Of a DNA stretch of 64,000 bases, positions 7,670 through 56,033 are shown piece by piece. Position numbers and translations under genes: made by a program. Position 1 is the stretch's first letter. Each line of letters starts with the position of its first letter. The stretch comes from Haliotis rubra (lineage: Eukaryota). The stretch is from contig NW_025765969.1 of NCBI RefSeq assembly GCF_003918875.1, positions 434,001 through 498,000 on the forward strand, read 5' to 3'. The notes beneath the pieces were generated by a model. That model did not search any database, was not told the origin of the DNA, and saw only the letters and a program-made list of their open reading frames with translations.

Positions 7670-8112
7670 TTAGGGCATTTCTATTTGATTTTCAGCCAGA
7701 CATATCTGGTACACCATACACTTCTTCCTATGAAGCCACAGTCCGTTCCGAGATTTGTACGACTTTCCACAGCGGCAGTCAAACGTCACATTATCGTGAA
7801 TGGTGGCGTAGTGGTTCTGCATGGCACGCATACTGAGGAAGGACTTGTCACATAGGGGACAGGCCACTTTCTCTACAGCCCCACCCACCAAGTCCGCGAA
7901 CCCTCCAGGGCCAGACAAAGGCGTCCTGCCCTGCCCTGCTCCCATATACCTCGTAACATCAACCAGGGCAGGGAAGAAGGAGGGTTGAGTGGTGGGGTCT
8001 TTCAGCAGGGCAAAGTTCAAGGCTGAACCTCTGAGAGCCAGGTGATGTTTATTGTCATTTTGTTCATACAGAGAGCTAGCTGCCGAACTGAAGCCAACTG
8101 AACTCTGTTGAC
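7670..8112 (-). CDS. Alternative terminal exon ZF-A: C2H2 + CxC-C2HC zinc-finger pair
   Basis: Acceptor CTCTTGTTAATTTCAG|GT (phase 1), open to TAA at 7670; CPLCDKSFLSMRAMQNHYATIH-DNVTFD-CRCGKSYKSRNGLWLHRKKC. Confidence 0.85.
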
Positions 8113-8282
8113 CTGAAATTAACAAGAGTTCACGGTTGAGTCCATGTTTCATATTGGCGAGACAATTAGCATTCCAAACGGGGAAACAAAAAGCCAAAAA
8201 AGGTAACAAAAAATATTAAAATAAATGGCAGCTGTTACAAAAAAATCTTTGACATGACATTTAATAATGCATTTTGAGTTTA

Positions 8283-8605
8283 GATTGAAGGCGTAGTGAT
8301 TTTTTGCCGAATATGGGTCAAATGTGTGACCTTGACCCTGACCAACACTGAGGGACCATCAAGACCAACTCAGCTGTATTGAGTTCTGATTGAAGGTGTA
8401 ATGATTTGTTTCCGAACATGGGTCAAACATATATGGCCTTGACCTTGACCCTGACCAACACTGAGGGACCATCATGACCAACTCGGCTCTATTGAGTTCT
8501 GATTGAAGGTGTAATGATTTGTTTCTGAATATGGGTCAAACATATGTGGCCTTGACCTTGACCTTGACAAACACTGATGGACCATCAACACCAACTCAGC
8601 TTCAT
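8283..8605. repeat. ~113-bp tandem repeat, ~3 copies
   Basis: GATTGAAGGTGTAATGATTTG...GGGTCAAA...CCTTGACC recurs at ~8283, 8388 and 8501. Confidence 0.8.
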
Positions 8606-9372
8606 GAACATCTGGTGTCACTGTTGTACAATATGTAAGATTTATAACAATCTATGTTATCATGATTATTTGGAATTCTGTGGCAGACATCATCAGACAA
8701 TGGAGCTGGAATAATCACAAATCTCTCACTGTCAGATCCCCAACACAGTTTTAATCATTACTCACTCACTAAAGTAGTTTCAGGACTGATCACGAAGAAA
8801 ACACTGCGGCTTTGTTCTCCAAACATTGTATCACTGGGGATGACACGTGATGGTGAAACAGTCAACCACCAGGAAAAAATTGTCAAAGAAACTGTTATGT
8901 TACGCCTGAACCTCATGAAAAATAATCCACATAAGCTTATTTCAACACAAATAAAAGGTCTGATGTACAGGCTTTCCTGGATCAACTTATTTCAACATAA
9001 GCATCATCGTGTTATCACCTGATATGTTGAACAAGATCGATATTGTTCAACTTAAGACAATCACAGCTAACGTTTTCCCAAGTCAATAACTTGAAGGTTG
9101 AAACTATGGGTGACAATAAATGTCATCTGTACTATTGTAGTACTGGGAGAGCCAAGAACCTTATTGCGATACCATTGCAATATACCACATTAACTGTAAT
9201 AAGCGCTCTAGACACTTAAAATACTGAAAAGGGGAGTAAAGGGAGTGAATAATAAAACCGCATACAAGTTATCTGTAAATCTGTTTTTGAAGATTGAGTG
9301 GTAATAAAAAACTTCATTTAAATGTTAATAAAACTAAAACCTTTCCAAAAGAGTATATTAAATATTACTTAT

Positions 9373-9613
9373 CAGGGGTGGAAATAACCCAATGCCCGAC
9401 GTCCGAGTCCAGTGTTTTTTTCTGTCGGGCAAGCAAATTTGTATATCACACTGTACCGGTGTCCAGTTGACTTTCCAATGTTAATTATGTTGCTTATTTA
9501 ACAAAATCAACAAGAAAACGGCCGGTATTGAGGAAAAATTATCAGGGCAAGTGATTTTACATGTGCCACTGTACCGGAGTACACTAGCAATTTTAAAGTT
9601 ATTTCCACCCCTG
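9373..9613. mobile_element. MITE with 5-bp TSD, copy 1
   Basis: TIR CAGGGGTGGAAATAA / TTATTTCCACCCCTG; TSD CTTAT; near-identical copy at 57307. Confidence 0.8.
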
Positions 9614-10079
9614 CTTATGTGCTGCTGTTTTCTGTAAAACATCTGTGATGTACAATAGGACAAACAGCAGTCATGTAACTTATCAGTCTTGTAGGGTATC
9701 ATTATAAAGATGGTCATACAGATTGGTCTGGAAGGTGGTCGGGGGTGCTTAATAGGGTTAATATGGTATCTCTAGGGCTGCAATGAATACACTATGGGGC
9801 AAATAGGATACAGATCATAAATATTGGGTAAATATGAGTTGCTGGTAAAGAATACACTTACAAGTCAGTAGCTTATTTATTATTCATTATATTCAGTGAA
9901 ACAAAATTCTCTGACATGTTTTGTCCTTGTCGACAGTGTTGATTTATCGTGACAATAACAGACATGAGAACGGCAAAGCACAAAAAATACTGAAAATTTA
10001 GCCGGGGGTTTAGGGCGTCTCTACTGCAGATTTACATCGATCTCAAAATACGTTCAAACTGAAACAAAAATCCTGGAGG

Positions 10080-10365
10080 TGAGGTGAGGTGAAATTGGGT
10101 TTTACGTCGTGCTTGAGAATATTTGGCACCTTATGACGGCGTAAATATTCCAAAATGTGTATGTAATCATTATATACTAGCCCAGACTTATGGTTTTATA
10201 GTGCTAGCCCACTGAGATACCATGCCGCAGTGAAGCATGAATACCCCACTCAGACACAGTATACTGACTCCGAGCCAACCAGTCCTTGTTGTGCCCATTA
10301 ATGCCGAGCGCCAGGCAGGGACCAACAAGTACCATATTTTAACGTCTTTTGGTTTGATGCGGTCA
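10080..10365 (-). mobile_element. SINE remnant with a Meta-like central domain
   Basis: CTGACTCCGAGCCAACCAGTC...CAAGTACCATATTTT...TTTGGTTTGA motif recalled from molluscan MetaSINEs (not verified by search); (GAGGT)n tail. Confidence 0.45.
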
Positions 10366-11748: not shown

Positions 11749-12765
11749 AGTCAACAACTGTCCTTCTTCCACAGAGGACACCGAAGTCTGTGATACTTCA
11801 AGCCAGATGGGTACATGTACCCCTTGCCACACAGAGAGTAGATCACGTTATCAGGCCACCGTTAACAGTCAACAACTATCCTTCTTCCACAGAGGACACC
11901 GAAGTCTATGATACTTCAAGCCAGATGGGTACATGTACCCCTTGCCACACAGAGAGTGGATCACATTATCAGGCCACCGTTAGCAGTCAACAATTATCCT
12001 TCTTCCACAGAGGACACCGAAGTCTGTGATACTTCAAGTCAGATGGGTACATGTACACCTTGCCACACAGAGAGAAGATCACGTTATCAGGCCACCGTTA
12101 TCAGGCCACCGTTAACAGTCAACAACTATCCTTCTTCCACAGAGGACACTGAAGTCTGTGATACTTCAAGTCAGATGGGTACATGAACACCTTGCCACAC
12201 AGAGAGTGGATCACATTATCAGGCCACCGTTAGCAGTCAACAATTATCCTTCTTCCACAGAGGACACTGAAGTCTGTGATACTTCAAGCCAGATGGGTAC
12301 ATGTACCCCTTGCCACACAGAGAGTAGATCACGTTATCAGGCCACCGTTAACAGTCAACAACTATCCTTCTTCCACAGAGGACACCGAAGTCTGTGATAC
12401 TTCAAGCCAGATGGGTACATGTACCCCTTGCCACACAGAGAGTAGATCACGTTATCAGGCCACCGTTAACAGTCAACAACTATCCTTCTTCCACAGAGGA
12501 CACCGAAGTCTATGATACTTCAAGCCAGATGGGTACTAGATCACGTTATCAGGCCACCGTTAACAGTCAACAACTATCCTTCTTCCACAGAGGACACCGA
12601 AGTCTATGATACTTCAAGCCAGATGGGTACATGTACCCCTTGCCACACAGAGAGTAGATCACGTAATCAGGCCACCGTTAACAGTCAACAACTGTCCTTC
12701 TTCCACAGAGGACACCGAAGTCTGTGATACTTCAAGCCAGATGGGTACATGTACACCTTGCCACA
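11749..12765. repeat. 118-bp tandem repeat derived from the 3' end of exon ZF-B
   Basis: ~8.5 copies; the last unit is the coding CGKVYMYPSGLKYHRLRCPLWKKDSC-stop. Confidence 0.92.
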
Positions 12766-13004
12766 AACACAGGAGTAAGTCACTTTATCATGGACAGCAG
12801 TCTTGTGATACAAAAATGCCCGTCTGCTGAAGAACATTTTCCCACATTGTGGACACGTGACATCTTTGGATCCCTGTGAAGGGTCCATGTACTGGTCCTG
12901 CTGAAACTGACCATACATGAAGCTGGATTCATCACGATCAGGATCACAAGGTCCAGACAAAGTTTCTGCGTGAGACTGACTGAACCTGAGTGACCTTCCG
13001 GCAT
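12685..13004 (-). CDS. Alternative terminal exon ZF-B: zinc-finger pair
   Basis: Acceptor TTTTTGTTATTTTCAG|AT (phase 1); CPQCGKMFFSRRAFLYHKTAVH-DKVTYS-CVCGKVYMYPSGLKYHRLRC. Confidence 0.85.
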
Positions 13005-13357
13005 CTGAAAATAACAAAAAGATCTGGTTTCAGTCAGTCCCAGCAACGCTTCAGAATTCCGTTTATTTCTAAACATCAGTCTGCCATAAGCATGGACAAC
13101 ATAGCTGATTTGGGAATTAGAGCATCTGTTGATGAACTTTGGTGAAACAAATGTTTTTATCACGATTCTGACAGCAGGGGATTCAAAGAAGACGTGGCTG
13201 TAACTGTCAGTCGTCTTGCTTCCATCAGTTTCAAGAACAAGATCAGGGTTTCACAGCATTGTGTAAGAAGACACTATGTTTTCAGTATAATAAACTCACA
13301 ATAATTTGACTGTTGACTTGTACTGCCATTTGAATATTGCATCCATCAGTAATAAGA

Positions 13358-13879: not shown

Positions 13880-14229
13880 TCACTGAGGTTGCTGTTGCTG
13901 CAGCAACTGCAGCTTCGCACACATCCTCTTATGTTTCCGAAGACTGGGTTTGTATTTGTATGCCTTCCCACAGATACAGGAGTGGGTGATGTTGTCATGC
14001 ACAGCATATTTGTGGTCCAGCAGCGTGCTGTACGCAGTGAACACCTTCCCACAGTCACGACATACAACGCCTCCTTCGGACCGGTAACACCCCTGAGATG
14101 ACCTTGAGGTCACAACACTACCTAGAGAAGAAGCTATTGGCAGCACTTGCATTGTATGATCAAAGCCCACTGGCTTGAATAATGTACTGTCAGCCATGGG
14201 ATGTCTGTACATGACTGAACTTCCTGCAC
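13880..14229 (-). CDS. Alternative terminal exon ZF-C: zinc-finger pair with Gln-rich tail
   Basis: Acceptor TTTTTGTTGCTTTCAG|GT (phase 1); CRDCGKVFTAYSTLLDHKYAVH-DNITHS-CICGKAYKYKPSLRKHKRMC, ends LQQQQPQ. Confidence 0.85.
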
Positions 14230-14366
14230 CTGAAAGCAACAAAAAGTTCAGTCAGTTGTCATGGCAACCATTTCATGACAACCATCATCCATGCTTATGC
14301 TCATATCAAACTGTGGAATTGCGCCGGCGCCATTTGATGAACACTTGGTTTCAATGTCCCTCACAT

Positions 14367-15057: not shown

Positions 15058-15417
15058 CAACCTAGGTACATCTTGATCAGTCCTAGGAAATAGAATATCA
15101 ACAAAGCCACACTGAATTACAATTACTGTTGTTTCCCATTATAAAACATGTTCCTTGTATATCTGGATTTATATTTCTAATAGGGATTAATAATTATATT
15201 CAAAATGTCATTCAAATATGTTTACATTCATTACAGCAAGATTGTGTGCCTGTTAATATTTACAACTTGATTTGGTCACTGCAGTGCTAAACAATAACTT
15301 GGTTTCGGTTTTTACTAATGTCATTGTTCTGTGCACGTGTTCTGCTGCAGATGTTAATTTTAAGAACAAAGTTACCAAGAACACACAACTATTTTAAAGC
15401 CTTTGTGAAAAGTTTCA

Positions 15418-15582
15418 GGGCGGTGGGGTAGCCTAGTGGTTAAAGCGTTGGCTCGTCATGCCGAAGACCCGGGTTCGAATCCCCACATGGGTACAATGTG
15501 TGAAGCCCATTTCTGGTGTTCCCCCACCGTGCTGTTGCTGGAATATAGCTAAAAGCGGCATAAAACCAAACTCAGTTAGTCA
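15418..15582 (+). mobile_element. SINE family A
   Basis: Full-length copy; TSD GTGAAAAGTTTCA. Confidence 0.85.
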
Positions 15583-15989
15583 GTGAAAAGTTTCATTGAA
15601 TATCTGGACTTATATTGATAAAATAGTTTATTAATCTTATTCAGAATGTCATTCAAATATGTTTACATTAATTCAGTGAAATCATGTGTCACTCTGATAT
15701 TTGACTTGACAACTGCAATGCAGAAAACTAACTTTGTCTCCCTTGTTGACTGGTGTCACTGTTCGAACAGTTTACAAAGGGCAATAATGTTGAAAAAACC
15801 AAGACTGAAATGCTCCAAATGAACTCAAATACAGAATAATGGAGACCGAGTCCCTGAAAAATATATCAGAAGAAAGTCATCCTGCTGTTTGCTTGTTGTT
15901 AATTACATCCAGTCCATTCCATGATGGACATGGTCAGGCTGACCATATCATGTCAGTAGGATGTCGCCCAAAAGGGTTGAAAAGTTTGT

Positions 15990-19079: not shown

Positions 19080-21020
19080 AGTTTCTCCATCCTAATGTCA
19101 TGACAGTCTTTCAGACACCTACACCAAGGTATTCTCAGACTCATAAACAACTTCTCCATCCTAATGACTAGACAATTCTGCTTGTGATTTCTAAACAGTC
19201 TTTCAAACTCTCACATTGTGCCAGTTCCAACCACTAGGTTCTCCATCCCAATGACCGGACAAAACTGGTTGTGGTTTCTAGGACAACCTCTCTGACAGTC
19301 ACACCAAGTAATTCTCAGACATTAAGACAAGTTCTCCATACTAATGACTGGACAGGTCTGCTTTGATTTTGTCTAGGACAGACTCTCACAACATGTTCAT
19401 CTCAAACACGAAGACAACTTCTCCATCCTAATGACTAGACACGTCTGCTTGTGATTTCTAAACAGTCTTTCAAACTCTCACATTGTGCCAGTTCCAACCA
19501 CTAGGTTCTCCATCCCAATGACCGGACAAAACTGGTTGTGGTTTCTAGGACAACCTCTCTGACAGACACACCAAGTAATTCTCAGACATTAAGACAACTT
19601 CTCCATACTAATGACTGGACAGGTCTGCTTTGTTTTTGTCTAGGACAGCCTCTCACAACATGTTCATCTCAGACATTAAGACAAGTTCTCCATACTTATG
19701 ACTGGACACGTCTGCTTTGTTTTTGTCTAGGACAGCCTCTCACAACATGTTCATCTCAGACATTAAGACAAGTTCTCCATACTAATGACTGGACAGGTCT
19801 GCTTTGATTTTGTCTAGGACAGCCTCTCACAACATGTTCATCTCAGACATTAAGACAAGTTCTCCATACTTATGACTGGACACGTCTGCTTTGTTTTTGT
19901 CTAGGACAGCCTCTCACAACATGTTCATCTCAGACATTAAGACAAGTTCTCCATACTAATGACTGGACACGTCTGCTTTGTTTTTGTCTAGGACAGCCTC
20001 TCACAACATGTTCATCTCAGACATTAAGACAAGTTCTCCATACTAATGACTGGACAGGTCTGCTTTGATTTTGTCTAGGACAGCCTCTCACAACATGTTC
20101 ATCTCAGACATTAAGACAACTTCTCCATACTTATGACTGGACACGTCAGCTTTGTTTTTGTCTAGGACAGCCTCTCACAACATGTTCATCTCAGACATTA
20201 AGACAAGTTCTCCATACTTATGACTGGACCGCGTCTGCTTTGTTTTGTCTAGGACAGCCTCTCACAACATGTTCATCTCAGACATTAAGACAACTTCTCC
20301 ATACTAATGACTGGACATGTCTGCTTTGTTTTTGTCTAGGACAGCCTCTCACAACATGTTCATCTCAGACATTAAGACAACTTCTCCATAGTAATGACTG
20401 GACACGTCTGCTTTGTTTTTGTCTAGGACAGCCTCTCACAACATGTTCATCTCAGACATTAAGACAAGTTCTCCATACTTATGACTGGACACGTCTGCTT
20501 TGTTTTTGTCTAGGACAGCCTCTCACAACATGTTCATCTCAGACATTAAGACAACTTCTCCATACTAATGACTGGACACGTCTGCTTTGTTTTTGTCTAG
20601 GACAGCCTCTCACAACATGTTCATCTCAGACATTAAGACAAGTTCTCCATAGTAATGACTGGACAGGTCTGCTTTGTTTTTGTCTAGGACAGCCTCTCAC
20701 AACATGTTCATCTCAGACATTAAGACAACTTCTCCATACTTATGACTGGACACGTCTGCTTTGTTTTTGTCTAGGACAGCCTCTCACAACATGTTCATCT
20801 CAGACATTAAGACAAGTTCTCCATACTTATGACTGGACACGTCTGCTTTGTTTTTGTCTAGGACAGCCTCTCACAACATGTTCATCTCAGACATTAAGAC
20901 AAGTTCTCCATAGTAATGACTGGACAGGTCTGCTTTGTTTTTGTCTAGGACAGCCTCTCACAACATGTTCATCTCAGACATTAAGACAACTTCTCCATCC
21001 TAATGACTGGACACGTCTGC
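19080..21020. repeat. 87-bp tandem repeat derived from the 3' end of exon ZF-D
   Basis: Unit TTAAGACAAGTTCTCCATACTTATGACTGGACACGTCTGCTTTG..., ~20 copies; overlaps the ZF-D stop. Confidence 0.92.
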
Positions 21021-21303
21021 TTGTGTCTTCTCAGACCAGGTTTGTACTTGTATGTCTTGCCACAGACACACACATAAGACACTTTATCATGTATGGCTGC
21101 CTTGTGATCCAGCATGGATCCATGGGCAGAGAAGACCTTGCCACAAATTGGACACGCCACACCACTTGACCTGTCTGTCCGAGGTGTAGAGTACATGCCT
21201 AAACCTACAGGTCTTGTTTCAGGATAGTTTAAGTCCACTGGCCAGACATGTCTGACCACTGATCCGTCCACAGACAGACTGAAACCGACTGAACCCCTCT
21301 CAC
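20981..21303 (-). CDS. Alternative terminal exon ZF-D: zinc-finger pair
   Basis: Acceptor TTTTTGTTGCTTTCAG|GT (phase 1); CPICGKVFSAHGSMLDHKAAIH-DKVSYV-CVCGKTYKYKPGLRRHKQTC. Confidence 0.85.
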
Positions 21304-22523
21304 CTGAAAGCAACAAAAAGTTCAGTCTAGTTTCAAGCTGTCTCTGGTTGAATACATAAAGAATACAGTGGTCAAACATTCTTGTATCAGACAAAAAAGA
21401 CAGTTAAAATCAGTTCCCAGAGCTGAAGTTCTTGAACATCTCATATATGGACATTTTGTCACTTGGGACATGAGAAGGTTGAGGCATCTGAAGACAGAAT
21501 CTTGGTAAACAATTTGACAGTCATCACATTTTGCAACTCCTTTAAACGCGTCCTACACAAAAACACAGAGTTTTACATTGTTCCATTATTGATAAGGTTA
21601 TTTTTCACATGATATGCATAACTGATTCCTATAATAAGTCGAGTGTAATTTTCAGAAAATGACATATCAGAATATCCTTATAAAAAATTGAGAGGTATAC
21701 ATCACAAATCGGTCAAAATAACCCAGAGCAAGCAAATATGGTTTTATGCCAGTTTTAGCAATATTCCAGCAATATCATGGTGAGGAACACCCGAAATGGA
21801 CTTTGAACATTTAAAATATGTGTTGAATCAAACCCAGGATTTCAGGAGGACGAGTGAACGCTTTAACAACTCAGCTACCTCACTGACCAAATAACACATG
21901 ATGCCCACATTTATCAGTGAACAGTAATCAGAAAAGAAATACTTAATACAATCTGAACAGGAAACATAGAACCAACATAAAGATAACCATTATTGCTGTT
22001 GAGACCATGTTCAAATCCTGCTTGAAACATCTGAATCTTAATGAAAACAATTCCAACTCAATAGGTCTCAGGACATTGCCAATGTTTGCCATAGAAGGCA
22101 TTTGATGCTAACATTTACTGGCATAAAACCACTAAAAAGGCTATACTTTTCTTAACCCTACGGACACTTCATTACACCAACTGATTCAGGCAAGCAGGCT
22201 AGAACCAATTTGCATTCATGTTTGTGTAATTTCTACCCTATTTCAAACCCTGGTACAGTAAGCTATTGATAAAACGAATTCAATGGTCATTAGTTGTGGT
22301 TCATTTTAGCAGTAATCGGTTATACATTTTTCAACTAAATATAACAAGGGGCCAGGAATGAAAAAACAACAGTTCATTAAATCTGTTGGTATGTGGTCAG
22401 TGTGTTCATTATTAACATGGTCTAATGCATCCTGTACACCATTTTCTAACTTATTATGAGATCAGACCCCAAAAGTACTCAGTTGTAATTACGACTACAG
22501 GTAACGAAATAAGACATTACCAG

Positions 22524-22974: not shown

Positions 22975-22995
22975 ATTACCAGTACTAATTAAAAC

Positions 22996-23523: not shown

Positions 23524-23885
23524 TCAGGTCAGAGTGTTCATCAACTCATTCAGCTGAGTCTTCAACACCTGACATGAACGTTTGTGTCGGAGTAGACCCG
23601 GCCTATACTTGTAGCTGTTGCCACACACACAGATATAGGCCACCTTGTCATGGATTGCTGCCTTGTGGTCCATCATGGAGGTGTGAGTCGTAAACTCACG
23701 GCCACAGTCAGGGCACGTTGTGCCATCTGGTCTCTGGACATGCCCTGAGTTGGTGCCCAGGTTGAAGCATGTGTCCAGAGATTTTGAGAAAATGTGCCCA
23801 TAAGGATGTGCCATGTCTGTCATCTGTCCAATTATCAAGCCTGGGTAAGCTGACGACTGACTGAAACTTGCTGAACTTTGTATAC
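23524..23885 (-). CDS. Alternative terminal exon ZF-E: zinc-finger pair
   Basis: Acceptor TTTTTGTTACTTTCAG|GT (phase 1); CPDCGREFTTHTSMMDHKAAIH-DKVAYI-CVCGNSYKYRPGLLRHKRSC. Confidence 0.85.
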
Positions 23886-24586
23886 CTGAAAGTAACAAAA
23901 AGTTCATTCTAGTTTCAGTCAGTTTTAGTCACCTAACGCTGGAGTGAGTGAGTGAGTGAGTGAGTTTGATTAACGCTTTCTTGAGAATAAGGCAGTTCTT
24001 CCCAAGATAAGATAATCACTTTAAGTTATTCCATAACTATATTAATGATGACCAGGAGTGAGTGAGTGAGTGAGTGAGAGTGAGCGAGCGAGCGAGCGAG
24101 CGAGCGAGAGCATTTAAACGCTGCTTTGAGACTAATGTCAGTTCAAGCACTGCATGTCAGCTTCAGCTTGAGGTGGTGATATTCATAGCATCGGTGAAAC
24201 ACATGAACAGATGTATGTATTATAAGCCAAAACTATAGCTGGAGAAAATATATTTATTCGACCTACAGCTTTTGTACAACGAGTAATAGCACTTCTGACT
24301 TTGCTAAAGATGCTGCCTCACCATCATAGGTGAAGTGAACTGCAGTTGAGGTAATGGTCACATCAAATTGTCCAACATCACTTAATGTGAGTCAGCTTTG
24401 TCGGAAAGTCCAAAGTGATGAAGCCTGTGTTCAGGGAAACCCATGAGTAAAGGTAATGTGATAAGAATGACTATTGTATAAGTATTGTTAACACTTGTCC
24501 AGACATATAGTATTGACTCTATTGGGTAGATATTAGTTACTCAATATCCCACAGGTTATTTAGCAAAATTAGAGGTTATATCAGTC

Positions 24587-28065: not shown

Positions 28066-28427
28066 CTATCCCTGAGAAGCTGAGAAGATTTTACAAATCT
28101 TCTGGTGCGACAATAAGGTTTTCTTCAAGGTGTAGATCTTGCCACACACACAGGAGTAACGGACTTTGTCGTGAACAGACTCCTTATGCAACTTCCTTGT
28201 ATTAGGGTGGGTGAACACCTTCCCACACTGGGGGCAGGGCCAGTAGTTTCCACCGCCTCCCCACCTGTCCTTCCTTGAGGCGACAGATTGACTCAAGGTT
28301 CGGGTCAGGGAGATCCCAGGCATGGTAAAGTCCGAATGAAGTCCTCTGTCCTCTGTTTCAACTCCATGATACTGAAGATGAGCCTGACTGGCCAAAGTTG
28401 AGAAATAATCGTTTGTGCCATCAGGAT
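28066..28427 (-). CDS. Alternative terminal exon ZF-G: zinc-finger pair
   Basis: Acceptor CCCTTCTTCCTTGCAG|AT (phase 1); CPQCGKVFTHPNTRKLHKESVH-DKVRYS-CVCGKIYTLKKTLLSHQKIC. Confidence 0.85.
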
Positions 28428-35658: not shown

Positions 35659-36041
35659 TCAAGGCCCTGCATTTGCTACAACAGGACAATTCTTCCTGTG
35701 AGCCAACAAGCCTGTATTGTAAGCATAGGATTTCCCACACACACAATTATAGGTTTTCTTATTGTGTACAGCTGCCACGTGATTGCACCGAGCTCCCGTA
35801 CTGGCAAACACTTTGCCACACTCTGGACATGGGTAACAGCCCCCGGAGAGTTCAGAACCTGCTCGAGAACCACCAACTTGACTAGAACTGATCATTCCTG
35901 GGTTGGGAATATTAAACTGGACAAAATTCTTGTCAAATGAAAGTGAGTTTTCGTTCCTTTTTCTGATTTTTGCACCATACCACTGGTTGACATTGCGATT
36001 GGGCTGAAGGCTTCTCGAAAAGTTGCCACAACCTTGAAAAT
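35659..36041 (-). CDS. Alternative terminal exon ZF-H: zinc-finger pair
   Basis: Acceptor TCTTTTGTTTCTTTCAG|AT (phase 1); CPECGKVFASTGARCNHVAAVH-NKKTYN-CVCGKSYAYNTGLLAHRKNC. Confidence 0.85.
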
Positions 36042-37554: not shown

Positions 37555-37877
37555 TCAGGTGCAAAATGGACAAGTCTTTCTGTGTCTGATAAGCCCAGGT
37601 TGGTAGCTGTAAACCTTCCCACAAACACACGGGAAGGTCACCTTCCCATGAACAGACACAATATGGTTCCTCCTGGAGCCCTGACTGGTGAACGCCTTGT
37701 CACAATGCGGGCAGTAATATAGTCCGCCGATTGGTTCAGGTAAATTCCTTGTGGACACGGACTGATCTGGATCCATGGAGGACTGGTCTGATTCCACTGG
37801 AAGCGTCTGATCAGACAGCCCTCGCCAGGACTTATAGGTTGAACAAGCTTCGTAATAACTGCCATAACCGCGAAGCC
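37555..37877 (-). CDS. Alternative terminal exon ZF-I: zinc-finger pair
   Basis: Acceptor TGTTCTTCCTTTCAG|GG (phase 1); CPHCDKAFTSQGSRRNHIVSVH-GKVTFP-CVCGKVYSYQPGLIRHRKTC. Confidence 0.85.
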
Positions 37878-39976: not shown

Positions 39977-40143
39977 GGGCGGTGGGGTAGCCTAGTGGTT
40001 AAAGCGTTGGCTTGTCACGCCAAAGACCCAGGTTTGAATCCACACATGGGTACAATGTGTGAAGCCCATTTCTGGTGTCCCGCGCCATGATGTTGCTGGA
40101 ATATTGCTAAAAGTGGCGTAAAACCAAACTCAGTCAGTCAGTC
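39977..40143 (+). mobile_element. SINE family A
   Basis: Full-length copy; TSD AGTATTTCA. Confidence 0.85.
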
Positions 40144-45561: not shown

Positions 45562-45838
45562 GTGAGTGAGTGAGTGCGAGAGTGAGTGCGAGAGTGAGTG
45601 AGTGAGTTTAGTTTTACGCCGCACTCAGCAATATTCCAGCTATATGTCTGCGGTCTGTAAATAACCGAGTCTGGACCAGACAATCCAGGAATCAACAGCA
45701 TGAACATCGATCTATGCAATTGGGAACCTATGACATGTGTCAACCAAGTCAGCGAGCCTGACCACCCTATCCTGTTAGTTGCCTCTTACGACAAGCATGG
45801 GTTACTGAAGGTCAATTCTAACCCAGATCTTCACAGGT
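45562..45838 (-). mobile_element. SINE family B
   Basis: Full-length reverse copy with expanded (GAGT)n tail. Confidence 0.8.
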
Positions 45839-48078: not shown

Positions 48079-48830
48079 TTACTTGTCATTTTCTGTTTTG
48101 ACATCCTTGGATTCCGTGTCACTTAGAGCTGATGGTGAACCTGTGACATTTGGGGCCGACTGAGAATCCATTAGATGTGAAGCTGAGGAAGAAGACCCAA
48201 GATTTGAGGCTGATTGAGAACCCCCAACATTTGCCGCCAATTGGGAACCAACAAGATTTGAGGCTGATTGAGAACCCCCAACATTTGCCGCCAATTGGGA
48301 ACCAACAAGATTTGAGGCTGATTGAGAACCCCCAACATTTGCCGCTAATTGGGAACCAACAAGATTTGAGGCTGATTGAGAACCCACAACATTTGCCACC
48401 AATTGGGAACCAACAAGATTTGAAGCAGACTGAGATTCCATGAGATGAAGTGCCCACGAGGAGCAAATCTTTTTATGTCGCTGCAGTCCCCCACTGTACT
48501 GATACACCTTGCCACAAACACAGGAATGAGACACCTTGTTGTGGATGGCATGGATGTGATTCCATCGGGACCCTTTCCCAGCAAACATCTTGTCACAGTA
48601 AGGGCAAGCGTGGCTGCCTGATACGTCCACCCCAGTGCCAGCACTCAGACTAAACCCAGAAAACGGCATGGACACGGACCCAGGTTTGCTCCGTCCCCTG
48701 GAAGCATGAAGGAAACGGTCTCCTGTTAATGAAGAGATGGAGATTGGGGTGTTCAACTGCTTGCCGAATCCGTGAAGAAAATCATTCTGTGGGTGATCAA
48801 CTCCAACAAAGCCTCCATTACTAGACAGAT
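48079..48830 (-). CDS. Alternative terminal exon ZF-J: zinc-finger pair plus in-frame 18-aa repeat tail
   Basis: Acceptor CCTTTTCTTACTTTCAG|AT at 48830 (phase 1, in frame with the listed ORF, adding LSSNGGFVGVDHPQNDFLHGFGKQ); CPYCDKMFAGKGSRWNHIHAIH-NKVSHS-CVCGKVYQYSGGLQRHKKIC, then ~4x SQSASNLVGSQLAANVGG. Confidence 0.82.
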
Positions 48831-49692: not shown

Positions 49693-50307
49693 TCACTAAA
49701 GCATATCTTGTACTGGGAGTTCCAAACGTTGCTGATCCCTGGGACAGGAATTCATTTTGTTGAAAAACATATGTTTAAACCTGCCTTAATATTTTCATAA
49801 AATAATGACACGTATTATAAGAAAAAAAGAAAACAAACCACCATATGTGTCACCTTTCATTAAAAACATAGCAAGTACTGTTTGTAACAGGTCATAATTT
49901 GTTGTCTCACTCAAAAGTTTCTTTTATTTGGATAATATACTCTTGGTACTTTTAGTCAACTGGTTTGCAAATATATTGCATATGCAAGTTAAATGACATG
50001 GCTATCTGGGCAGACTTACAAATGTTTATGCATAAAATACAGCAATCATTGTTTTTAAAAAAGGAAATTAATGCAGTTACAACGTAAAAAAAAAAAAAAA
50101 AATGAATAAAAATGATAATTCAGGCAACTTGTGATTGCAAAGATAACATTGGAATCGTAATACTCTGTCAGTCAAGTTCCATAGCTCATTTCTCGCTCTC
50201 AAACACAAAGAAGTCTTAACAATGGACAGGTCTCCTTATATCACAAGGCAACTTGCAATGGCAAGGATTCAAATGGAATCCTGATACTCTGAAGTTCCAA
50301 AAGTCCA

Positions 50308-50757
50308 TTTCTAGTTAACTTAACAAGCTCAAGGACTGACAACACCAGACAGGCCTTCTTATGTCGAATCAGACCCTGCTTGTAGGCATACTGCTTGCCA
50401 CACACACAGGTGAACTGTATCTAATTCTAGCTAAGCTCAAGGACTGAGCAACACCGGACAGGTCTTCTTATGTCGGATCAAACCTTGCATGTAGGCATAC
50501 TGCTTGCCACATGCACAGGTGAACTGTATCTAATTCTAGCTAAGCTCAAGGACTGAGCAACACCGGACAGGTCTTCTTATGTCGGATCAGACCCTGCTTG
50601 TAAGCATACTGCTTGCCACACACACTGGTGAACTGTATCTCTTTCCAGTTAACTTAACAAAGCTCAAGGACTGAGCAACACCAGACAGGCCTTCTTATGT
50701 CGGATCAGACCCTGCTTGTAAGCATACTGCTTGCCACACACACAGGTGAACTGTATT
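50308..50757. repeat. ~109-bp tandem repeat of the second finger and stop of exon ZF-K
   Basis: Three extra copies of IQFTCVCGKQYAYKQGLIRHKKACLVLLSP-stop DNA at ~50325, 50433 and 50542. Confidence 0.9.
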
Positions 50758-50911
50758 TTGTGGTGGACAGATGCTACATGGTTATGTCTAGCCCCGGCAC
50801 TGGAGAACTCACGGTGACACTCTGGGCACGGGTACCTGCCCAATCTGCCCCCTGGCACAACGGTCCAGGAGCTGTATTGCTCATCATTTGGGCTCCCATA
50901 ACCATGATCAC
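50664..50911 (-). CDS. Alternative terminal exon ZF-K: zinc-finger pair
   Basis: Acceptor CTTTTTGTTACTTTCAG|GT (phase 1); CPECHREFSSAGARHNHVASVH-HKIQFT-CVCGKQYAYKQGLIRHKKAC. The upstream part of the listed ORF is SINE sequence. Confidence 0.85.
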
Positions 50912-50974
50912 CTGAAAGTAACAAAAAGCCAGATCCAGTCTTTCTTGCTTTGGACTGATTTCGGTCAGTTTCAA

Positions 50975-51123: not shown

Positions 51124-52091
51124 CCAAATTTCAATGAACAACAGCCAGATGTCTTTCTATTTCTGGTTTAGATTTTCATAGTGAAAAGTTGGGTCGGTAG
51201 ATTGAAACAAAAATTGTTTTGGATCAATGGGCGATACAAAACACATATGTTGGCCTGGTTTGGATCCTAATGACTGAGTGAGTCAGTTTAGTTGCTTTTA
51301 GCAATATTCCAGCAATATCACGGCAGGGGACACTAGAAATGAGCTTCACACATTGTATCCATGTGGGGAATCGAACCTGGTTCTTCGGCATGACGCCCGA
51401 ACACTTTAACTATTTGGCTACCCCTCTGATCCTTATGAATAGTAAATATATATAAAAGGTAACATGTGATAGCGACATTGGAAAAGTTTGTTTTCGTCAC
51501 ATAAAAATCTGTAGGTTTATGTTCTCTGGCAAAGAAATTGTTATTTTGAAATTTGAATGCATTTTTTCTGAATCTAATATTGTTACAGTCAGTGAATCGA
51601 AAACAAAACCAAAGCACAAAAAATTGAAAGGCCTAACAAAGTTTTTTGTTTTTTTCCGGTACTGATTTGTTAGTATCAATAGACTTGTTTTGGGCAAATG
51701 TTTCCAATATGTACATCGTTCTTGATTAAGTTCATTCCCTGCCCTTGTCATATAATAATCCCTAATTAAACCATCATAGCTATTTCATCATTATCCAATA
51801 TTATCTTCTTAAAAACTTCAAAAGTATCTCATCCAAGAAAATAATTAAAAAACATAAAAACTGTTACTTATATATTGAAATACATTGTTATTTTCCATGT
51901 TTGCGGACTTCATAAACTAACAAAAACAATTAAACACCTCATAAGTGAGCGAGTAATTTGGGTTTCACAATGCCTTTAGTAATAGTATCACATTATAAGC
52001 AGGAGTCTTCGTAATAACAGACGTAATCCCATGTTATGCCTCTGACGCCATACTCAGCTAGCACACTGGATTCAACTGGAAATATTTTCAG

Positions 52092-52262
52092 ACTGACTGA
52101 CTGACTGAGTTTAGTTTTACGCCGCTTTTAGCAATATTCCAGCAATATCACGTCGGGGGACACCAGATATGGGCTTAACACAGTGTGCCCATGTGGGGAA
52201 TCGAACCCGGGTCTTCGGCGTGACGAATCAACGCTTTAACCACTAGGCTACCCCACCGCCCC
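52092..52262 (-). mobile_element. SINE family A
   Basis: Full-length copy; TSD AAATAT(T/C)TTCAGA; oppositely oriented copy at ~52335-52491. Confidence 0.85.
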
Positions 52263-53024: not shown

Positions 53025-53340
53025 AGAACTGGATATGTAGACGTGTGGACATGGAGAGTTGGGTGTGTCGAACTGGATGTGGGCGTGTGGATATGGAGAG
53101 TCGGGTGTGTCGAACTGGATATGTGGACGTGTGGACATGGAGAGTCGGGTGTGTCGAACTGGATATGTGGACGTGTGGACATGGAGAGTTGGGTGTGTCG
53201 AACTGGATGTGGGTGTGTGGATATGGCGAGTTGGGTGTGTCGAACTGGATATGTGGACGTGTGGACATGGAGAGTTGGGTGTGTCGAACTGGATATGTGG
53301 ACGTGTGGACATGGAGAGTTGGGTGTGTCAAACTGGACCT
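53025..53340. repeat. 42-44-bp minisatellite
   Basis: Unit GAACTGGATATGTGGACGTGTGGACATGGAGAGTTGGGTGTGTC, ~7 copies. Confidence 0.9.
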
Positions 53341-53682
53341 GACAGGAAAAACAAAAGTATTTCTGCTGCCATGGTTAAAAAATGTCATCTTTAGAAATGT
53401 AGTCTGTAATACAACAGTTTAGTCTCTACCCTCTGTGAAGTTTACAGCTTGGCCAAGCTGATTCATGTTAACTTTGAACCCTGGCTGGGCTATCCATGTG
53501 TGCAGTGAGTGTGGAGTCAAACCTGGACATGTTTTGAAAAGTAAACACATTAATGTGTTCAGGTCCTAATTATGGCAATATTCAAGTGTGACATTGCTGC
53601 TTGAACATCCTCAAGACTTGACCTGGGAAACAAGTGACACACACCGATCGACACCACCACAATATCTCACAAAGAAACCACA

Positions 53683-54011
53683 TTACTGCTTCAACATGGA
53701 CTGATACAGGTAGCACTTCTTCTGGTGGTTGTTCAGACTGGGCCTATACTTGTAGGCCTTGCCGCACACACACGGAAAGGTGACATTGTCATGCACAGCC
53801 TGCTTGTGGTAGTACAGGCCGGAATCGTCAGTAAACTCCTTATCACACTGGGGACATTTTTTCTTTCCCCAGTTCCTGTCAGTGAGCCCACCGTACCCGG
53901 TCTGAGTGCTCCCCCCACCCAGGTCATGGTACCCCACACAGGCATACCTGCTTCCCCTGTATGCTGTGTCACACTGATAGGAGGAGGAGGAGGGGCCATT
54001 ATTGCCATAAC
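53683..54011 (-). CDS. Alternative terminal exon ZF-L: zinc-finger pair
   Basis: Acceptor CTTTTGTTCCTTTCAG|GT (phase 1); CPQCDKEFTDDSGLYYHKQAVH-DNVTFP-CVCGKAYKYRPSLNNHQKKC. Confidence 0.85.
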
Positions 54012-54604
54012 CTGAAAGGAACAAAAGTCAGCTGGAGTTTGGGTCGTTGAAGGAAACAAAATCACTGCTAAAGATCTTTGTTGGATTATGGTCTAACACT
54101 GCACTCGTGTGCCAAAACCTCTTAGCATCATTTTCACACCCTAATGAAATTGTATGAACAATTGCATGCCAAGTTCACTTGACCAAACTGAATCTTACTA
54201 GACTCTGACTTCAGACAAGTGGCTAAAGTAACTCACTGCACTTCGAAATATTCCAGCTGTACGACAGCAGCTGGTATACAACTGAGTCCGAAACGGTCTG
54301 CACAGTGATTGTCTTTGCCAAACACTTTTGAATTCGCTGGCCAAAACATGCATCTTAGCACCATTTATTAATGACCAATAGTCAACTAATTGGGACTGAT
54401 CTATTCAACTGGGTGTGGTGAATTACCTAGACTGGTTGCATTCAGCAACAATTGCAACAAACCAATCTCCAGTCAAGAAATCAGCATACTTTATTTTTTC
54501 GTCAAGATTTCTTGGAACAACCATCACTGAGTGTGTGTGTACCCACATACGTGTGCATGCATGTATTTATGTGTTGTTTAACTACACACCAATCTATATT
54601 GTAG

Positions 54605-54995
54605 TGAACAATGGGGAGAGTTCTACAGATATACAACTTCTTTATTTTTAATATGAGCGACGTTTTGGTGTAGCTACTAACACTGTTGATAATGATAATG
54701 ATAATGGTGTTAGTAGCTCCACTGAAACGTCCCTCATATTAATAATAAAGAAGTTGTATATCTGTAGAACTCTCCTCATTGTTCAGGAGGTGGGGTAGCC
54801 TAGTGGTTAAAGCGTTGGCTCGTCACGCCGAAGACCCGGGTTCGAATCCCCACATGGGTACATTGTGTGAAGCCCATTTCTGGTGTCCCCCGCCGTGATG
54901 TTGCTGGAATATTGCTAAAAGCTGAGACTAAAAACTCTCAGTCAGTCAGTCAGTCATTGTTCAAAACACTGACTTCTAAATGCCACTCAAAGAAG
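54605..54995. mobile_element. Penelope-like inverted terminal remnant, copy 2 (itself interrupted by a SINE)
   Basis: Arms GATATACAACTTCTTTATT / AATAAAGAAGTTGTATATC, CGACGTTTT / GAAACGTC, and the tail ACTTCTAAATGCCACTCAAAG shared with copy 1. Confidence 0.5.
54786..54955 (+). mobile_element. SINE family A
   Basis: Full-length copy; TSD TCATTGTTCA. Confidence 0.85.
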
Positions 54996-55260
54996 TGGCC
55001 TGTAAATAATTATCTCTGGACCTGACAATCCAGTGATGAATGTATCAATGATACCAAGACAGAGACTGACCACCTGATCCACAAAGCCACCACTCACAAC
55101 CTGCTGAAGACAATTTCTAAACTAGAATACCCACAGGGGAAACATCCGAGTCAACTAATCAAGACTATAAAGGTATAAACATAAGGTTTATTTCAACATT
55201 CCCACACAATTTCCACACGGTGATGAGGTCCGAACAAACACTTAAACAGTCTTGTCAGCA

Positions 55261-55610
55261 TCAGAAGCATTTTCTTCCAGCTTCGACAGATACTGCCTGC
55301 AATTTTTTTCGGTGGAAAACAAAGTTTGGTCTGTACTTAAATACAAACCCACATACACATTCATATGTGACTTTGTCATGGATTGCCTTCTTGTGGTAGT
55401 ACAGACCACTCCTGTCCCCGAACACCTTCTCACATTGAGGACATTTATGCACCTTGTGGGGCTTAGAGGCATAGTTCTGTCTTAAACCAGCCTGTCTAAC
55501 GTAAGCACTGTTAAAACTCAAGTCTGACGGGACTGGGGCCAGTCCTGCCGAGGCCACGTGGCAATAATCCATGAAGGATTGCAATCCTGATTGTCCGTAA
55601 TCATGTAAAC
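55261..55610 (-). CDS. Alternative terminal exon ZF-M: zinc-finger pair with an apparent 1-nt frameshift before the last Cys
   Basis: Acceptor TTTTTGTTGATTTCAG|GT (phase 1); CPQCEKVFGDRSGLYYHKKAIH-DKVTYE-CVCGFVFKYRPNFVFHRKK. Removing one base from the 7-nt homopolymer at 55303-55309 restores HRKNC and moves the stop to 55242. Confidence 0.78.
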
Positions 55611-55686
55611 CTGAAATCAACAAAAATCCAATTTCAGGTACAGAAAATAGAACGTGAGCCAAGTATCCTTCAGTTTCACACGTCAT

Positions 55687-56033
55687 CTACAAAAACACAT
55701 TTCCTCGCAAATTTCCGTGGGGGCCAGAGAAACAAACAATACATGATGTGTCTCCTGCGTCAAATGGTGCAAATTCCAAGGGGACTGTGGTCGTGTTGTA
55801 TGTTTTCCCATCTGCAATAGCACAATTGTACCGATAGAACAACTGTCTATGGGCATGACATATTCTCTGAGGGTGGACACCATTGACATCTTGGGTGATA
55901 TCAATATTAAACAACTGCCACAGTTCCTTTTGACATTTTCGCGTGGAACATCCACTTCCTGTGTTCTTGCCACATATCCGACACACTTTCCGCAATCGCA
56001 TGATATGGAAGTCGAAACTATGCTGCCCGGCAA
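55687..56033 (-). CDS. Putative alternative terminal exon encoding a RAG1 N-terminal / Chapaev-transposase-like zinc-binding domain
   Basis: Acceptor GACTGACAATGGTTCTCCATTGTTCTTCAG|TT (phase 1, branch-point-like CTGAC), open for 115 codons to TAG; motifs HIMRLRKVCRICG, ELWQLFNIDITQDVNGVHPQRICHAH, EFAPFDAGDTSCIVC. Confidence 0.7.

What the first reader, a model, noticed from the sequence alone, without database searches (positions are those of the whole stretch)
7670..56033. Cassette of 14 same-phase alternative terminal exons: a lola/mod(mdg4)-style DNA-binding-domain swapping locus in a probable mollusc
Seen: 14 short coding islands, all on the minus strand, each starting at a polypyrimidine-CAG acceptor in phase 1 and ending in its own stop. 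None has a conserved start codon, and no intervening shared coding exon was found. Thirteen carry a homologous zinc-finger pair. All but one are intact despite dense transposon insertion around them, which suggests purifying selection. Identical phase in 14 of 14 is what splicing to one common upstream donor requires. Established: Drosophila lola, broad, fruitless, tramtrack and mod(mdg4) join constant BTB exons to mutually exclusive 3' exons with different zinc fingers, and lola and mod(mdg4) do so partly by trans-splicing. Inference: this is one transcription-factor gene producing at least 14 isoforms with different C-terminal binding modules; I do not know of such a system described in molluscs. 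The constant N-terminus (BTB or other) lies beyond 64000 and cannot be identified here.
Basis: partly seen in the sequence, partly recalled or inferred. Interest (0 to 1): 0.95.

Follow-up and report, generated by a model that had tools for sequence, protein, structure and literature searches.

The report
Swappable zinc-finger exon array, abalone
A 48-kb stretch of an abalone-type genome holds 13 alternative last exons, each coding for a different two-finger DNA-binding module, plus one RAG1-type zinc-domain exon; public gene models in abalone species join orthologues of three of the finger exons, one at a time, to a shared N-terminal half that is not a BTB domain, which makes this a mollusc counterpart of the fly lola/mod(mdg4) genes that I found in no paper.

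Summary
Exactly 13 C2H2+C2HC zinc-finger-pair coding islands lie on the minus strand and none on the plus strand. Each starts at a homologous polypyrimidine-CAG acceptor in phase 1 and ends in its own stop. A 14th phase-1 island encodes a RAG1 N-terminal zinc domain (NZD/Chapa type).

RefSeq isoforms from Haliotis rufescens (LOC124128061), H. cracherodii and H. asinina join one constant 269-residue N-terminus to single orthologues of window islands 14229, 23885 and 55610. The junctions fall exactly at the predicted acceptors, with a split codon G|NN. The constant part has no match in the window, so it lies outside it. It has no BTB or other Pfam match.

A paralogous gene has isoforms numbered up to X36–X42. 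H. cracherodii carries further same-strand arrays. Against a second Haliotis genome the exons show dN/dS of about 0.2.

Cis-splicing versus trans-splicing is unresolved, and I examined no transcript reads. I found no paper describing the system, although RefSeq annotates the isoforms automatically. This scan noted similar twin loci about 0.8 Mb away on the same sequence.

Verdict: a real new variant of a known kind.

The parts
7670..8112 (-). Alternative terminal exon 1 (146 codons + stop), C2H2+C2HC finger pair
   Evidence: Pfam zf-C2H2 family hits
12685..13004 (-). Terminal exon (105 codons), finger pair. A hairpin spans its 3' splice site (about 12966-13046).
13880..14229 (-). Terminal exon (115 codons), finger pair. 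Orthologue of the C-terminus of H. rufescens LOC124128061 isoform X6. Hairpin at about 14213-14253.
   Evidence: (87% identity, alignment starts at 14227)
20981..21303 (-). Terminal exon (106 codons), finger pair. Strongest hairpin across a 3' splice site (about 21272-21343). An 87-bp satellite abuts its 3' end.
   Evidence: (z -6.0)
23524..23885 (-). Terminal exon (119 codons), finger pair. Orthologue of H. cracherodii isoform X4 and H. rufescens isoform X8. Hairpin at about 23856-23923.
   Evidence: 82% identity, starts at 23886; dN/dS 0.19 against L003
25066..25376 (-). Terminal exon (102 codons), finger pair
28066..28427 (-). Terminal exon (119 codons), finger pair
35659..36041 (-). Terminal exon (126 codons), finger pair
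37555..37877 (-). Terminal exon (106 codons), finger pair
48079..48830 (-). Longest terminal exon (249 codons): finger pair followed by a Ser/Gln-rich tail built from a 54-nt coding repeat (48198-48435)
50664..50911 (-). Shortest terminal exon (81 codons), finger pair. Its 3' half is tandemly repeated downstream (50325-50756).
53683..54011 (-). Terminal exon (108 codons), finger pair
55242..55610 (-). Terminal exon, finger pair. Orthologue of H. rufescens isoform X5, H. cracherodii X3 and H. asinina X2. In this assembly one extra A in an A-run near 55300 shifts the frame, giving an apparent stop at 55261; the orthologous stop is at 55242-55244.
   Evidence: (dN/dS 0.20)
55687..56033 (-). Phase-1 exon (114 codons + stop) encoding a RAG1 N-terminal zinc domain (NZD/Chapa type). 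Probable 14th alternative terminal exon with an acceptor of separate origin. An in-frame ATG lies at 56055.
   Evidence: Pfam PF12560, 36.8 bits; PDB 21wb_A, E 4e-7; 92.5% nucleotide identity and dN/dS 0.18 against L004; the 45 nt before the AG are 100% conserved
11749..12765 (-). 118-bp minisatellite made of copies of the second-finger half of exon 13004, running from inside the exon into its downstream flank

Best explanation
The window holds the variable 3' part of one transcription-factor gene of an abalone (Haliotis-type) genome, the orthologue of H. rufescens LOC124128061.

Shown, in RefSeq models of other Haliotis species:
- Constant 5' exons lie outside the window. They encode about 269 residues: a conserved 86-residue N-terminal domain of unknown fold, then an acidic and Ser-rich linker.
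- The constant part ends in a phase-1 donor whose last base is G.
- That donor is joined to one of the acceptors in the window.

Inferred:
- Each variable exon supplies the last two bases of the junction codon, a variable spacer, a two-finger DNA-binding module (a classical C2H2 finger followed by a C-x-C...H-x4-C finger), its own stop and probably its own 3' end.
- The gene therefore yields 13 proteins with the same N-terminal half and different DNA-binding ends.
- It probably yields a 14th whose end is a domesticated transposase-type RAG1 NZD zinc domain.
- The most likely mechanism is ordinary cis-splicing of a long primary transcript, coupled to the choice of 3' end.
- Local hairpins that enclose the 3' splice site of four exons may modulate that choice.
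For: Finger pairs: 13 complete pairs, all on the minus strand and none on the plus strand.

Splice sites: homologous acceptors in phase 1, with frames closed just upstream.

RefSeq isoforms P0158/P0171, P0159 and P0160/P0161/P0172 consist of an identical N-terminus plus one island. They align to the window from residue 270/271 onward, at 23886, 14227 and 55611, with 81-89% identity. The next-best island scores at most 64%. Residues 1-269 find nothing in the window.

Junction codon: in the isoforms the junction residue is G or D. This fits a donor G followed by the exon's first two bases, which are GT, AT or GG in the 13 finger exons.

Scale: the paralogous gene LOC124129002 has isoforms numbered up to X36 (H. 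rufescens) and X42 (H. asinina). An ESM Atlas cluster of 105 mollusc proteins shares the N-terminal domain.

Selection: dN/dS is 0.18-0.20 for three exons against a second Haliotis genome. Exons are 88-92% identical, against 68-85% for flanks. The 32-45 nt before each AG are perfectly conserved.

Other arrays: the same acceptor, phase and finger architecture recurs 27 times on one strand in two H. cracherodii loci.

DNA binding: the finger profile aligns as a two-finger unit to solved DNA-binding zinc-finger proteins.

From my knowledge of NCBI's annotation pipeline: numbered alternative isoforms are normally issued only when transcript alignments support the variant introns.
Against: I examined no RNA reads. 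RefSeq XP models are computational and I could not inspect their support.

Only 3 of the 14 islands were matched to a retrieved isoform, because the search returns few hits.

I never saw the constant exons and their donor as DNA, and their distance is unknown. It is at least 8 kb; the only constant-type exons noted by this scan lie about 0.8 Mb away, and that is unchecked.

Three finger exons (21303, 23885, 48830) have no AATAAA or ATTAAA within 1.5 kb downstream, and the 77 nt between the RAG1-like exon's stop and the next acceptor hold none either.

Exon 55610 is frameshifted in this assembly.

The two Logan contigs that cover these exons are unspliced.
Confidence: 0.82

Rival explanations
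1. The exon array is the same, but the join is made in trans. Each variable exon, or group of exons, is transcribed from its own promoter, and its acceptor is spliced to the donor of a separately made, early-terminated constant transcript, as at Drosophila mod(mdg4) and partly at lola.
For: The constant exons are not within 8 kb upstream of the first island.

H. cracherodii carries large same-family arrays (L001 and L002, about 0.4 Mb apart). Gnomon could not attach these to any constant exons and chained them into artificial multi-finger proteins.

Unchecked scan notes report a conserved block at the last constant donor and a poly(A) site just after it in the twin loci about 0.83 Mb away.

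Two unspliced contigs begin upstream of acceptors.
Against: All 13+1 exons here, and all 27 found in the two H. cracherodii loci, are on one strand, so nothing requires trans-splicing.

Conservation against a second species starts only about 65-100 nt upstream of the acceptors, which leaves little room for conserved promoters.

The unspliced contigs may simply be genomic DNA or pre-mRNA.
Confidence: 0.13
2. A tandem family of small independent zinc-finger genes, each with its own promoter and first exon.
For: Tandem duplication clearly made the array. Four islands have an in-frame ATG shortly upstream of the acceptor.
Against: No repeated N-terminal exon lies between the islands, and some gaps are only 77-1500 nt. 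The ATGs are not conserved in position. Frames close 5-85 codons upstream. The splice-acceptor blocks are conserved. Orthologous isoform models join three of the islands to one shared N-terminus.
Confidence: 0.03
3. A partly relic array: only a few islands are still used as exons, and the rest are unselected leftovers that happen to remain open.
For: Only three islands have a matching isoform among those retrieved. Exon 55610 is frameshifted here. Half-exon debris and exon-derived satellites show ongoing decay around the exons.
Against: All 13 finger pairs keep every zinc ligand and an open frame from acceptor to stop, although island identities are only 24-40%, so the duplications are old. 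The exons that could be tested have dN/dS of about 0.2. The only frameshift is a one-base change in a homopolymer run and may be an assembly error.
Confidence: 0.08

Closest known systems
Drosophila longitudinals lacking (lola)
   Same: Constant 5' exons are joined to about 20 mutually exclusive 3' exons, 17 of which carry different C-terminal zinc fingers (as stated in PMC11426971 and PMC6237743). Each isoform has one short finger module, typically a pair that includes a C2HC finger (the finger detail is from my own knowledge).
   Different: Lola's constant part carries a TTK-type BTB domain, which is arthropod-specific (PMC11426971). Here the constant part has no BTB or any other Pfam match. 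The finger order here is C2H2 then C2HC. Lola is partly trans-spliced; here that is unknown.
Drosophila mod(mdg4)
   Same: At least 31 alternative 3' terminal exons are joined to common exons (PMC6237743), with DNA-binding ends of transposase-related type (FLYWCH). Here a RAG1-NZD/Chapa-type exon sits in the array.
   Different: mod(mdg4) has a BTB constant part. Its joining is obligate trans-splicing from independent promoters, with some variable exons on the opposite strand (PMC6237743, PMC4387717). Here every exon is on one strand and most ends are C2H2-type fingers.
RefSeq models Haliotis rufescens LOC124128061 and LOC124129002, and their H. cracherodii, H. asinina and H. rubra counterparts
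   Same: Direct orthologue (LOC124128061) and paralogue (LOC124129002) of the gene in the window. They have the same constant N-terminus plus one finger exon per isoform.
   Different: They are automatic annotations under misleading names ('zinc finger protein 526-like', 'hydrogen peroxide stress regulator 1-like'). I found no published description. The window comes from a different Haliotis-type genome (82-89% protein identity).
[quoted passage not shown]
   Same: Island 55687-56033 matches Pfam RAG1_imp_bd above its cutoff. It matches the solved mouse RAG1 NZD chain over both halves, with no counterpart of the stretch between them. The preprint reports that invertebrate RAG1L and Chapa domains lack helix H2, but I did not map that helix onto the gap (preprint 10.64898/2026.01.24.700457).
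   Different: No transposase or recombinase core follows. The domain stands alone as a 114-codon exon with a stop, is conserved under purifying selection, and is embedded in a zinc-finger exon array.

Membership tests
lola / mod(mdg4)-type BTB loci (TTK-group BTB transcription factors) | Constant exons encode an N-terminal TTK-type BTB domain | tested here: not met
   The constant 269-300 residues of the orthologous and paralogous isoforms have no Pfam family at E up to 10. A PDB profile search found nothing. The AF2 model is beta-rich but of low confidence.
lola / mod(mdg4)-type BTB loci (TTK-group BTB transcription factors) | Many mutually exclusive 3' terminal exons, each with its own DNA-binding module and stop, joined to one common donor | tested here: met
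   There are 13+1 phase-1 exons with their own stops. Orthologous isoforms join a common N-terminus to single exons at the predicted acceptors. This rests on gene models, not on reads.
lola / mod(mdg4)-type BTB loci (TTK-group BTB transcription factors) | Trans-splicing between separately transcribed constant and variable RNAs | not testable with these tools
   This needs allele-phased or hybrid RNA data.
lola / mod(mdg4)-type BTB loci (TTK-group BTB transcription factors) | Some variable exons on the opposite strand (mod(mdg4)) | tested here: not met
   0 of 13 finger pairs lie on the plus strand, and all islands in L001 and L002 are on one strand.
Tandem cluster of independent C2H2 zinc-finger genes | Each unit has its own start codon or 5' exon and promoter | tested here: not met
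   There is no conserved ATG. Frames are closed upstream of the acceptors. There is no repeated 5' exon and no Pfam-bearing ORF between islands. Isoform models share one N-terminus.
Classical two-finger C2H2 DNA-binding module | C-x2-C...H-x3-5-H ligands and similarity to solved DNA-binding fingers | tested here: met
   Finger 1 reaches the Pfam zf-C2H2 / zf-C2H2_4 cutoffs in 5 of the 7 finger islands scanned. All ligands are invariant. The profile aligns as a two-finger unit to ZNF568, PRDM9, SALL4 and others. Finger 2 is atypical (C-x-C, with a terminal Cys in place of His).
RAG1 NZD / Chapaev 'Chapa' domain (island 55687-56033) | Sequence similarity across both zinc modules (ZFa with CRICG, and ZFb) | tested here: met
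   Pfam PF12560 scores 36.8 bits against a cutoff of 23.3. PDB 21wb_A gives E 4.3e-7, with query residues 8-29 and 38-106 aligned to chain residues 15-36 and 69-133.
RAG1 NZD / Chapaev 'Chapa' domain (island 55687-56033) | Adopts the NZD fold | tested here: inconclusive
   AF2 with a two-sequence alignment gave pLDDT 38.7, which is unusable.
RAG1 NZD / Chapaev 'Chapa' domain (island 55687-56033) | Attached to a DDE transposase or recombinase core | tested here: not met
   A stop follows 114 codons, and the next 77 nt lead into the acceptor of finger exon 55610. There is no transposase ORF nearby.

The most novel reading that the evidence does not exclude
Abalone carry a family of giant exon-swapping transcription-factor loci built on a new N-terminal domain that is not BTB. 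Only two constant-region copies (the twin genes) would serve hundreds of variable DNA-binding exons spread over hundreds of kilobases, including this window, possibly about 0.8 Mb from the constant donors. The exons would be joined by trans-splicing or by extremely long-range cis-splicing. The arrays would repeatedly capture transposase DNA-binding domains (RAG1-NZD here; a pogo HTH exon has been reported elsewhere in this genome) as new ends. This would be an independent invention of the mod(mdg4) principle outside arthropods, on a larger scale.
Probability: 0.12. Interest if true: 0.92.

Novelty: new variant of a known kind. Interest (0 to 1): 0.68.

Why it matters
Loci that build many transcription factors by swapping the DNA-binding end on a common protein-interaction half are known essentially from arthropod BTB genes (lola, mod(mdg4), fru, br, ttk).

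A mollusc gene family does the same with an unrelated, uncharacterised N-terminal domain. It has 13-14 variable ends at this locus, isoform numbers up to 36-42 in the sister gene, and further arrays spread over at least 0.4 Mb. This would show that the architecture evolved convergently.

It also gives a second, independent system for asking:
- how one acceptor among dozens is chosen;
- whether trans-splicing is an intrinsic feature of such loci;
- what property the constant domain must have;
- how transposase DNA-binding domains are recruited as new transcription-factor ends.

On the practical side, it flags systematic mis-annotation: arrays are chained into artificial poly-zinc-finger proteins, and isoforms are named after unrelated human ZNFs.

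Tried and rejected
Homologue searches: a single 106-residue island found nothing, and a region search with P0011 found only itself, because of the word-index and length limits. The unrestricted profile search was swamped by multi-finger proteins, but it did reveal the H. cracherodii chained models.

Fetching the orthologous locus with its constant exons failed. Only the longest isoform of a gene is indexed. L001 and L002 turned out to be other arrays without constant exons.

The fold of the constant N-terminal domain could not be assigned:
- AF2 gave pLDDT 52.8.
- There was no credible match in the AFDB clusters (best probability 0.82, TM 0.37) or in the PDB (best Z 4.5).
- The Atlas search returned only the family itself.
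- Pfam, NCBIfam, PDB sequence and profile searches and the Atlas feature search were all blank.
- A weak AFDB hit to the N-terminus of an entry named only 'uncharacterized protein LOC106150702 isoform X5' (no organism shown; TM 0.24) was not pursued.

AF2 of the RAG1-like island failed, with pLDDT 38.7.

Poly(A) signals were uninformative in this AT-rich DNA.

I considered a general structure across the 3' splice site for all exons and rejected it. Only one subfamily has it: 4 exons here and 1 in L002. Covariation is weak, with 4 pairs, and the orthologue carries 2 mismatches.

I looked for further hidden exons using the acceptor matrix and Pfam scans of all long minus-strand ORFs, and found none.

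Seven literature searches found no description of such a locus in molluscs or other Spiralia.

Full report
**Observation**

A six-frame regular-expression scan and an HMM built from the finger core find exactly 13 complete C2H2+C2HC finger pairs in the 64-kb window. All are on the minus strand (E 1e-25 to 1e-28). No significant match lies on the plus strand.

The only other matches are fragments:
- tandem copies of the second-finger half of an exon at 11754-12677;
- similar copies at 50244-50653;
- a scrap at 7004-7261.

The exon then begins with the last two bases of a codon, which is phase 1. In that frame the islands are open for 81-249 codons and each ends in its own stop. The same frames are closed by a stop 5-85 codons upstream of the acceptor. 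No start codon is conserved.

The 13 finger acceptors are homologous, with consensus CTTTTTGTTnCTTTCAG and often a CTGAC-type branch motif. A matrix built from them finds only one other minus-strand site and two plus-strand sites at 12 bits or more. Because these acceptors share descent, their identical phase follows from duplication and is not an independent coincidence. The conserved splice signals are still meaningful.

**What the exons encode**

Finger 1 reaches the Pfam C2H2 cutoffs in 5 of the 7 finger islands scanned. All zinc ligands are invariant across the 13 islands, although overall identity is only 24-40%. Finger 2 has an unusual C-x-C...H-x4-C pattern. The profile aligns as a two-finger unit to solved DNA-binding zinc-finger proteins.

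The 14th island (55687-56033) is different. It matches Pfam RAG1_imp_bd at 36.8 bits, against a cutoff of 23.3. [quoted passage not shown] A 2026 preprint (10.64898/2026.01.24.700457) defines this domain (NZD) and its 'Chapa' relatives in Chapaev transposases. No transposase core follows the exon here.

**Whose genome**

The window shares a SINE family of about 170 bp at roughly 90% identity with Haliotis cracherodii. Its exons have 81-89% identical orthologues in H. rufescens, H. cracherodii and H. asinina proteins. The 'probable mollusc' is therefore an abalone or a very close relative.

**The decisive evidence**

I searched with a profile of the 13 islands, using the 249-residue island as first sequence so that longer proteins were admitted. 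This returned RefSeq isoforms of 386-414 residues from four Haliotis species.

The sequences consist of one constant N-terminus followed by exactly one finger island. tblastn against the window gave:
- H. cracherodii 'zinc finger protein 526-like isoform X4' and H. rufescens LOC124128061 isoform X8 align from residue 270 at 23886-23527.
- LOC124128061 isoform X6 aligns from residue 271 at 14227.
- Isoform X5, with H. cracherodii X3 and H. asinina X2, aligns from residue 270 at 55611.

The next-best island in each case is at most 64% identical, so these are one-to-one orthologues.

Residues 1-269 match nothing in the window, so the constant exons lie outside it.

In the isoforms the junction residue is G or D. 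This is what a donor ending in G gives when followed by the GT, AT or GG that open the finger exons.

A second, paralogous gene (H. rufescens LOC124129002) has a constant part whose first 86 residues are about 87% identical to those of the first gene. Its isoforms are numbered up to X36 in H. rufescens, X42 in H. asinina and X23 in H. rubra. An ESM Atlas cluster of 105 mollusc proteins, auto-named 'uncharacterized protein isoform X29', shares the N-terminal domain.

To my knowledge NCBI's pipeline issues numbered alternative isoforms only when transcript alignments support them. I could not inspect that evidence.

**Selection**

Two Logan contigs from another Haliotis sample (DRR299178; L003 and L004) are colinear with the window.

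Nucleotide identity by segment:

| Segment | Identity |
|---|---|
| RAG1-like exon | 92.5% |
| Finger exons 55610 and 23885 | 88.5% and 88.7% |
| Spacer, upstream intron and downstream flanks | 68-85% |
| Short block just upstream of acceptor 23885 | 91% |

dN/dS is 0.18, 0.20 and 0.19 for the three exons.

The 45 nt before the AG of the RAG1-like exon and the 32 nt before the AG of exon 55610 are 100% identical between the two genomes, while sequence further upstream diverges. That is the signature of working 3' splice sites.

It is the main argument that the RAG1-like island is a used exon in the phase-1 frame. However, I retrieved no isoform model containing it. It also has an in-frame ATG 22 nt upstream, so an independent small ORF is not excluded.

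The one 'broken' island, 55610, differs from its orthologue by an A7 run instead of A6. The shifted frame continues with the orthologous tail, including the last zinc-binding Cys. This may be an assembly error.

**Wider picture**

The unrestricted profile search was dominated by multi-finger proteins. It did reveal two H. cracherodii models, 'zinc finger protein 11-like' and 'zinc finger protein 16-like'. Their sequences are chains of truncated finger-pair exons.

Their loci (L001 and L002) lie about 0.4 Mb apart on the chromosome that also carries both isoform genes. They hold 27 further islands with the same acceptor, phase 1 and a finger pair, all on one strand. They contain no constant exons and are not the orthologue of this window. 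Abalone genomes therefore hold several such arrays, some of which automatic annotation cannot attach to a constant part.

Unchecked first-stage notes of this scan place 'twin' constant regions with arrays about 0.80-0.87 Mb beyond the end of this window. They also report a conserved block at the last constant donor and a poly(A) site just after it. I could not test these notes. They bear on how far this array lies from its donor.

**The constant part**

It is not BTB. The results were:
- no Pfam or NCBIfam hit at E up to 10;
- nothing in the PDB by sequence or by profile;
- a low-confidence AF2 model (pLDDT 52.8; predicted order strand-helix-strand-strand-strand-strand);
- no credible structural match to that model.

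Its role as an oligomerisation or cofactor-binding domain, by analogy with BTB, is conjecture.

**Mechanism**

Shown in orthologues' gene models: one common phase-1 donor is joined to one of many terminal exons.

Inferred: the same holds for all 13 finger exons here, and probably for the NZD exon. Each isoform would then be a transcription factor with the same N-terminal half and a different DNA-binding end.

Cis-splicing versus trans-splicing is open.
- Nothing requires trans-splicing. All exons are on one strand, and conserved sequence begins only 65-100 nt upstream of the acceptors.
- Against a simple cis picture stand the unknown distance to the constant exons and the existence of orphan arrays.

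Poly(A) hexamers are uninformative in this AT-rich DNA.

**A side observation that may bear on exon choice**

In four neighbouring exons (13004, 14229, 21303, 23885) an intronic arm pairs with the first 25 nt or so of the exon, so that the polypyrimidine tract and the AG sit inside a hairpin. The z-scores are -2.6 to -6.9.

The related exon L002:49275 in H. cracherodii has the same hairpin (z -5.7). The other 35 exons tested do not. Covariation is weak, with 4 pairs changed on both sides, and the orthologue L003 carries two mismatches. I treat this as a lead only.

**Comparison with known systems**

The closest systems are Drosophila lola and mod(mdg4).
- lola has 20 alternative 3' exons, 17 of them with fingers.
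- mod(mdg4) has at least 31 alternative 3' exons, mostly FLYWCH, and is obligately trans-spliced, with some exons on the other strand (PMC11426971, PMC6237743, PMC4387717).

This locus works like them. It fails the membership test on the defining BTB domain, which in its TTK form is arthropod-specific (PMC11426971). It also fails on the opposite-strand feature. It is therefore an analogue that probably arose independently.

Seven literature searches found no description of such a locus in molluscs or Spiralia. The isoforms do exist in RefSeq under uninformative automatic names.

**Verdict**

It is a new variant of a known kind. My confidence in the alternative-terminal-exon architecture is about 0.8.

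Noticed in passing
window 12966-13046, 14213-14253, 21272-21343, 23856-23923 (minus strand); L002:49220-49319: Local RNA hairpins pair an intronic arm (about ACTGAAACTAGACTGAAC) with the first 25 nt or so of the exon, enclosing the polypyrimidine tract and the AG of the 3' splice site. The z-scores are -2.6 to -6.9. The hairpins occur only in this exon subfamily. Covariation is weak and the orthologue has 2 mismatches.
   Followed up: partly
window 11749-12765 and 50325-50756: Minisatellites (118-bp and 109-bp units, about 8 and 4 copies) are built from the second-finger half of the adjacent terminal exon. They start inside the exon and run downstream. Another note of this scan describes a satellite born from a dead zinc-finger exon elsewhere in the genome.
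   Followed up: partly
window about 55296-55305: An A7 run, where another Haliotis has A6, shifts the frame of exon 55610 and removes the last zinc ligand. The alternative frame restores the orthologous tail. It is either an assembly homopolymer error or a real lineage-specific lesion.
   Followed up: partly
window 19313-21022: An 87-bp satellite (19.6 copies, 90% match) overlaps the last 40 nt or so of the coding sequence of exon 21303 and fills its downstream flank. No AATAAA or ATTAAA lies within 1.5 kb of that stop.
   Followed up: no
window 48198-48435: A coding 54-nt tandem repeat (4.4 copies, 96% match) makes a Ser/Gln/Gly-rich tail after the finger pair of the longest exon (48830).
   Followed up: no
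window 29700-33000, plus strand: A decayed non-LTR retrotransposon (APE endonuclease and RVT_1 pieces in several frames) lies antisense inside the array.
   Followed up: partly
window e.g. 10175-10357, 15406-15592, 39977-40140, 45611-45798, 52090-52262, 54780-54963, 56283-56455: There are more than 12 copies of a SINE-like element of about 170-190 bp, shared at 86-95% identity with H. cracherodii loci. This is useful for placing the genome among abalone.
   Followed up: no
L001 (JAJLRC010000007.1 23.504-23.535 Mb) and L002 (23.893-23.945 Mb), H. cracherodii: RefSeq models XP_071086389 and XP_071086392 ('zinc finger protein 16-like' and '11-like') look like artefacts that chain truncated alternative terminal exons of such arrays into multi-finger proteins. 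The arrays hold 27 phase-1 finger exons and no constant exons.
   Followed up: partly
window 7004-7261, minus strand: A fragment duplicating the tail of exon 8112 (...GLWLHRKKCMVYQ...) lies 400 nt downstream of that exon.
   Followed up: no
window 59216-61177 and 61915-63488: Two large satellites (66/132-bp and 74/139-bp units) fill most of the stretch between the first exon of the array and the window end. No coding exon was found there.
   Followed up: no
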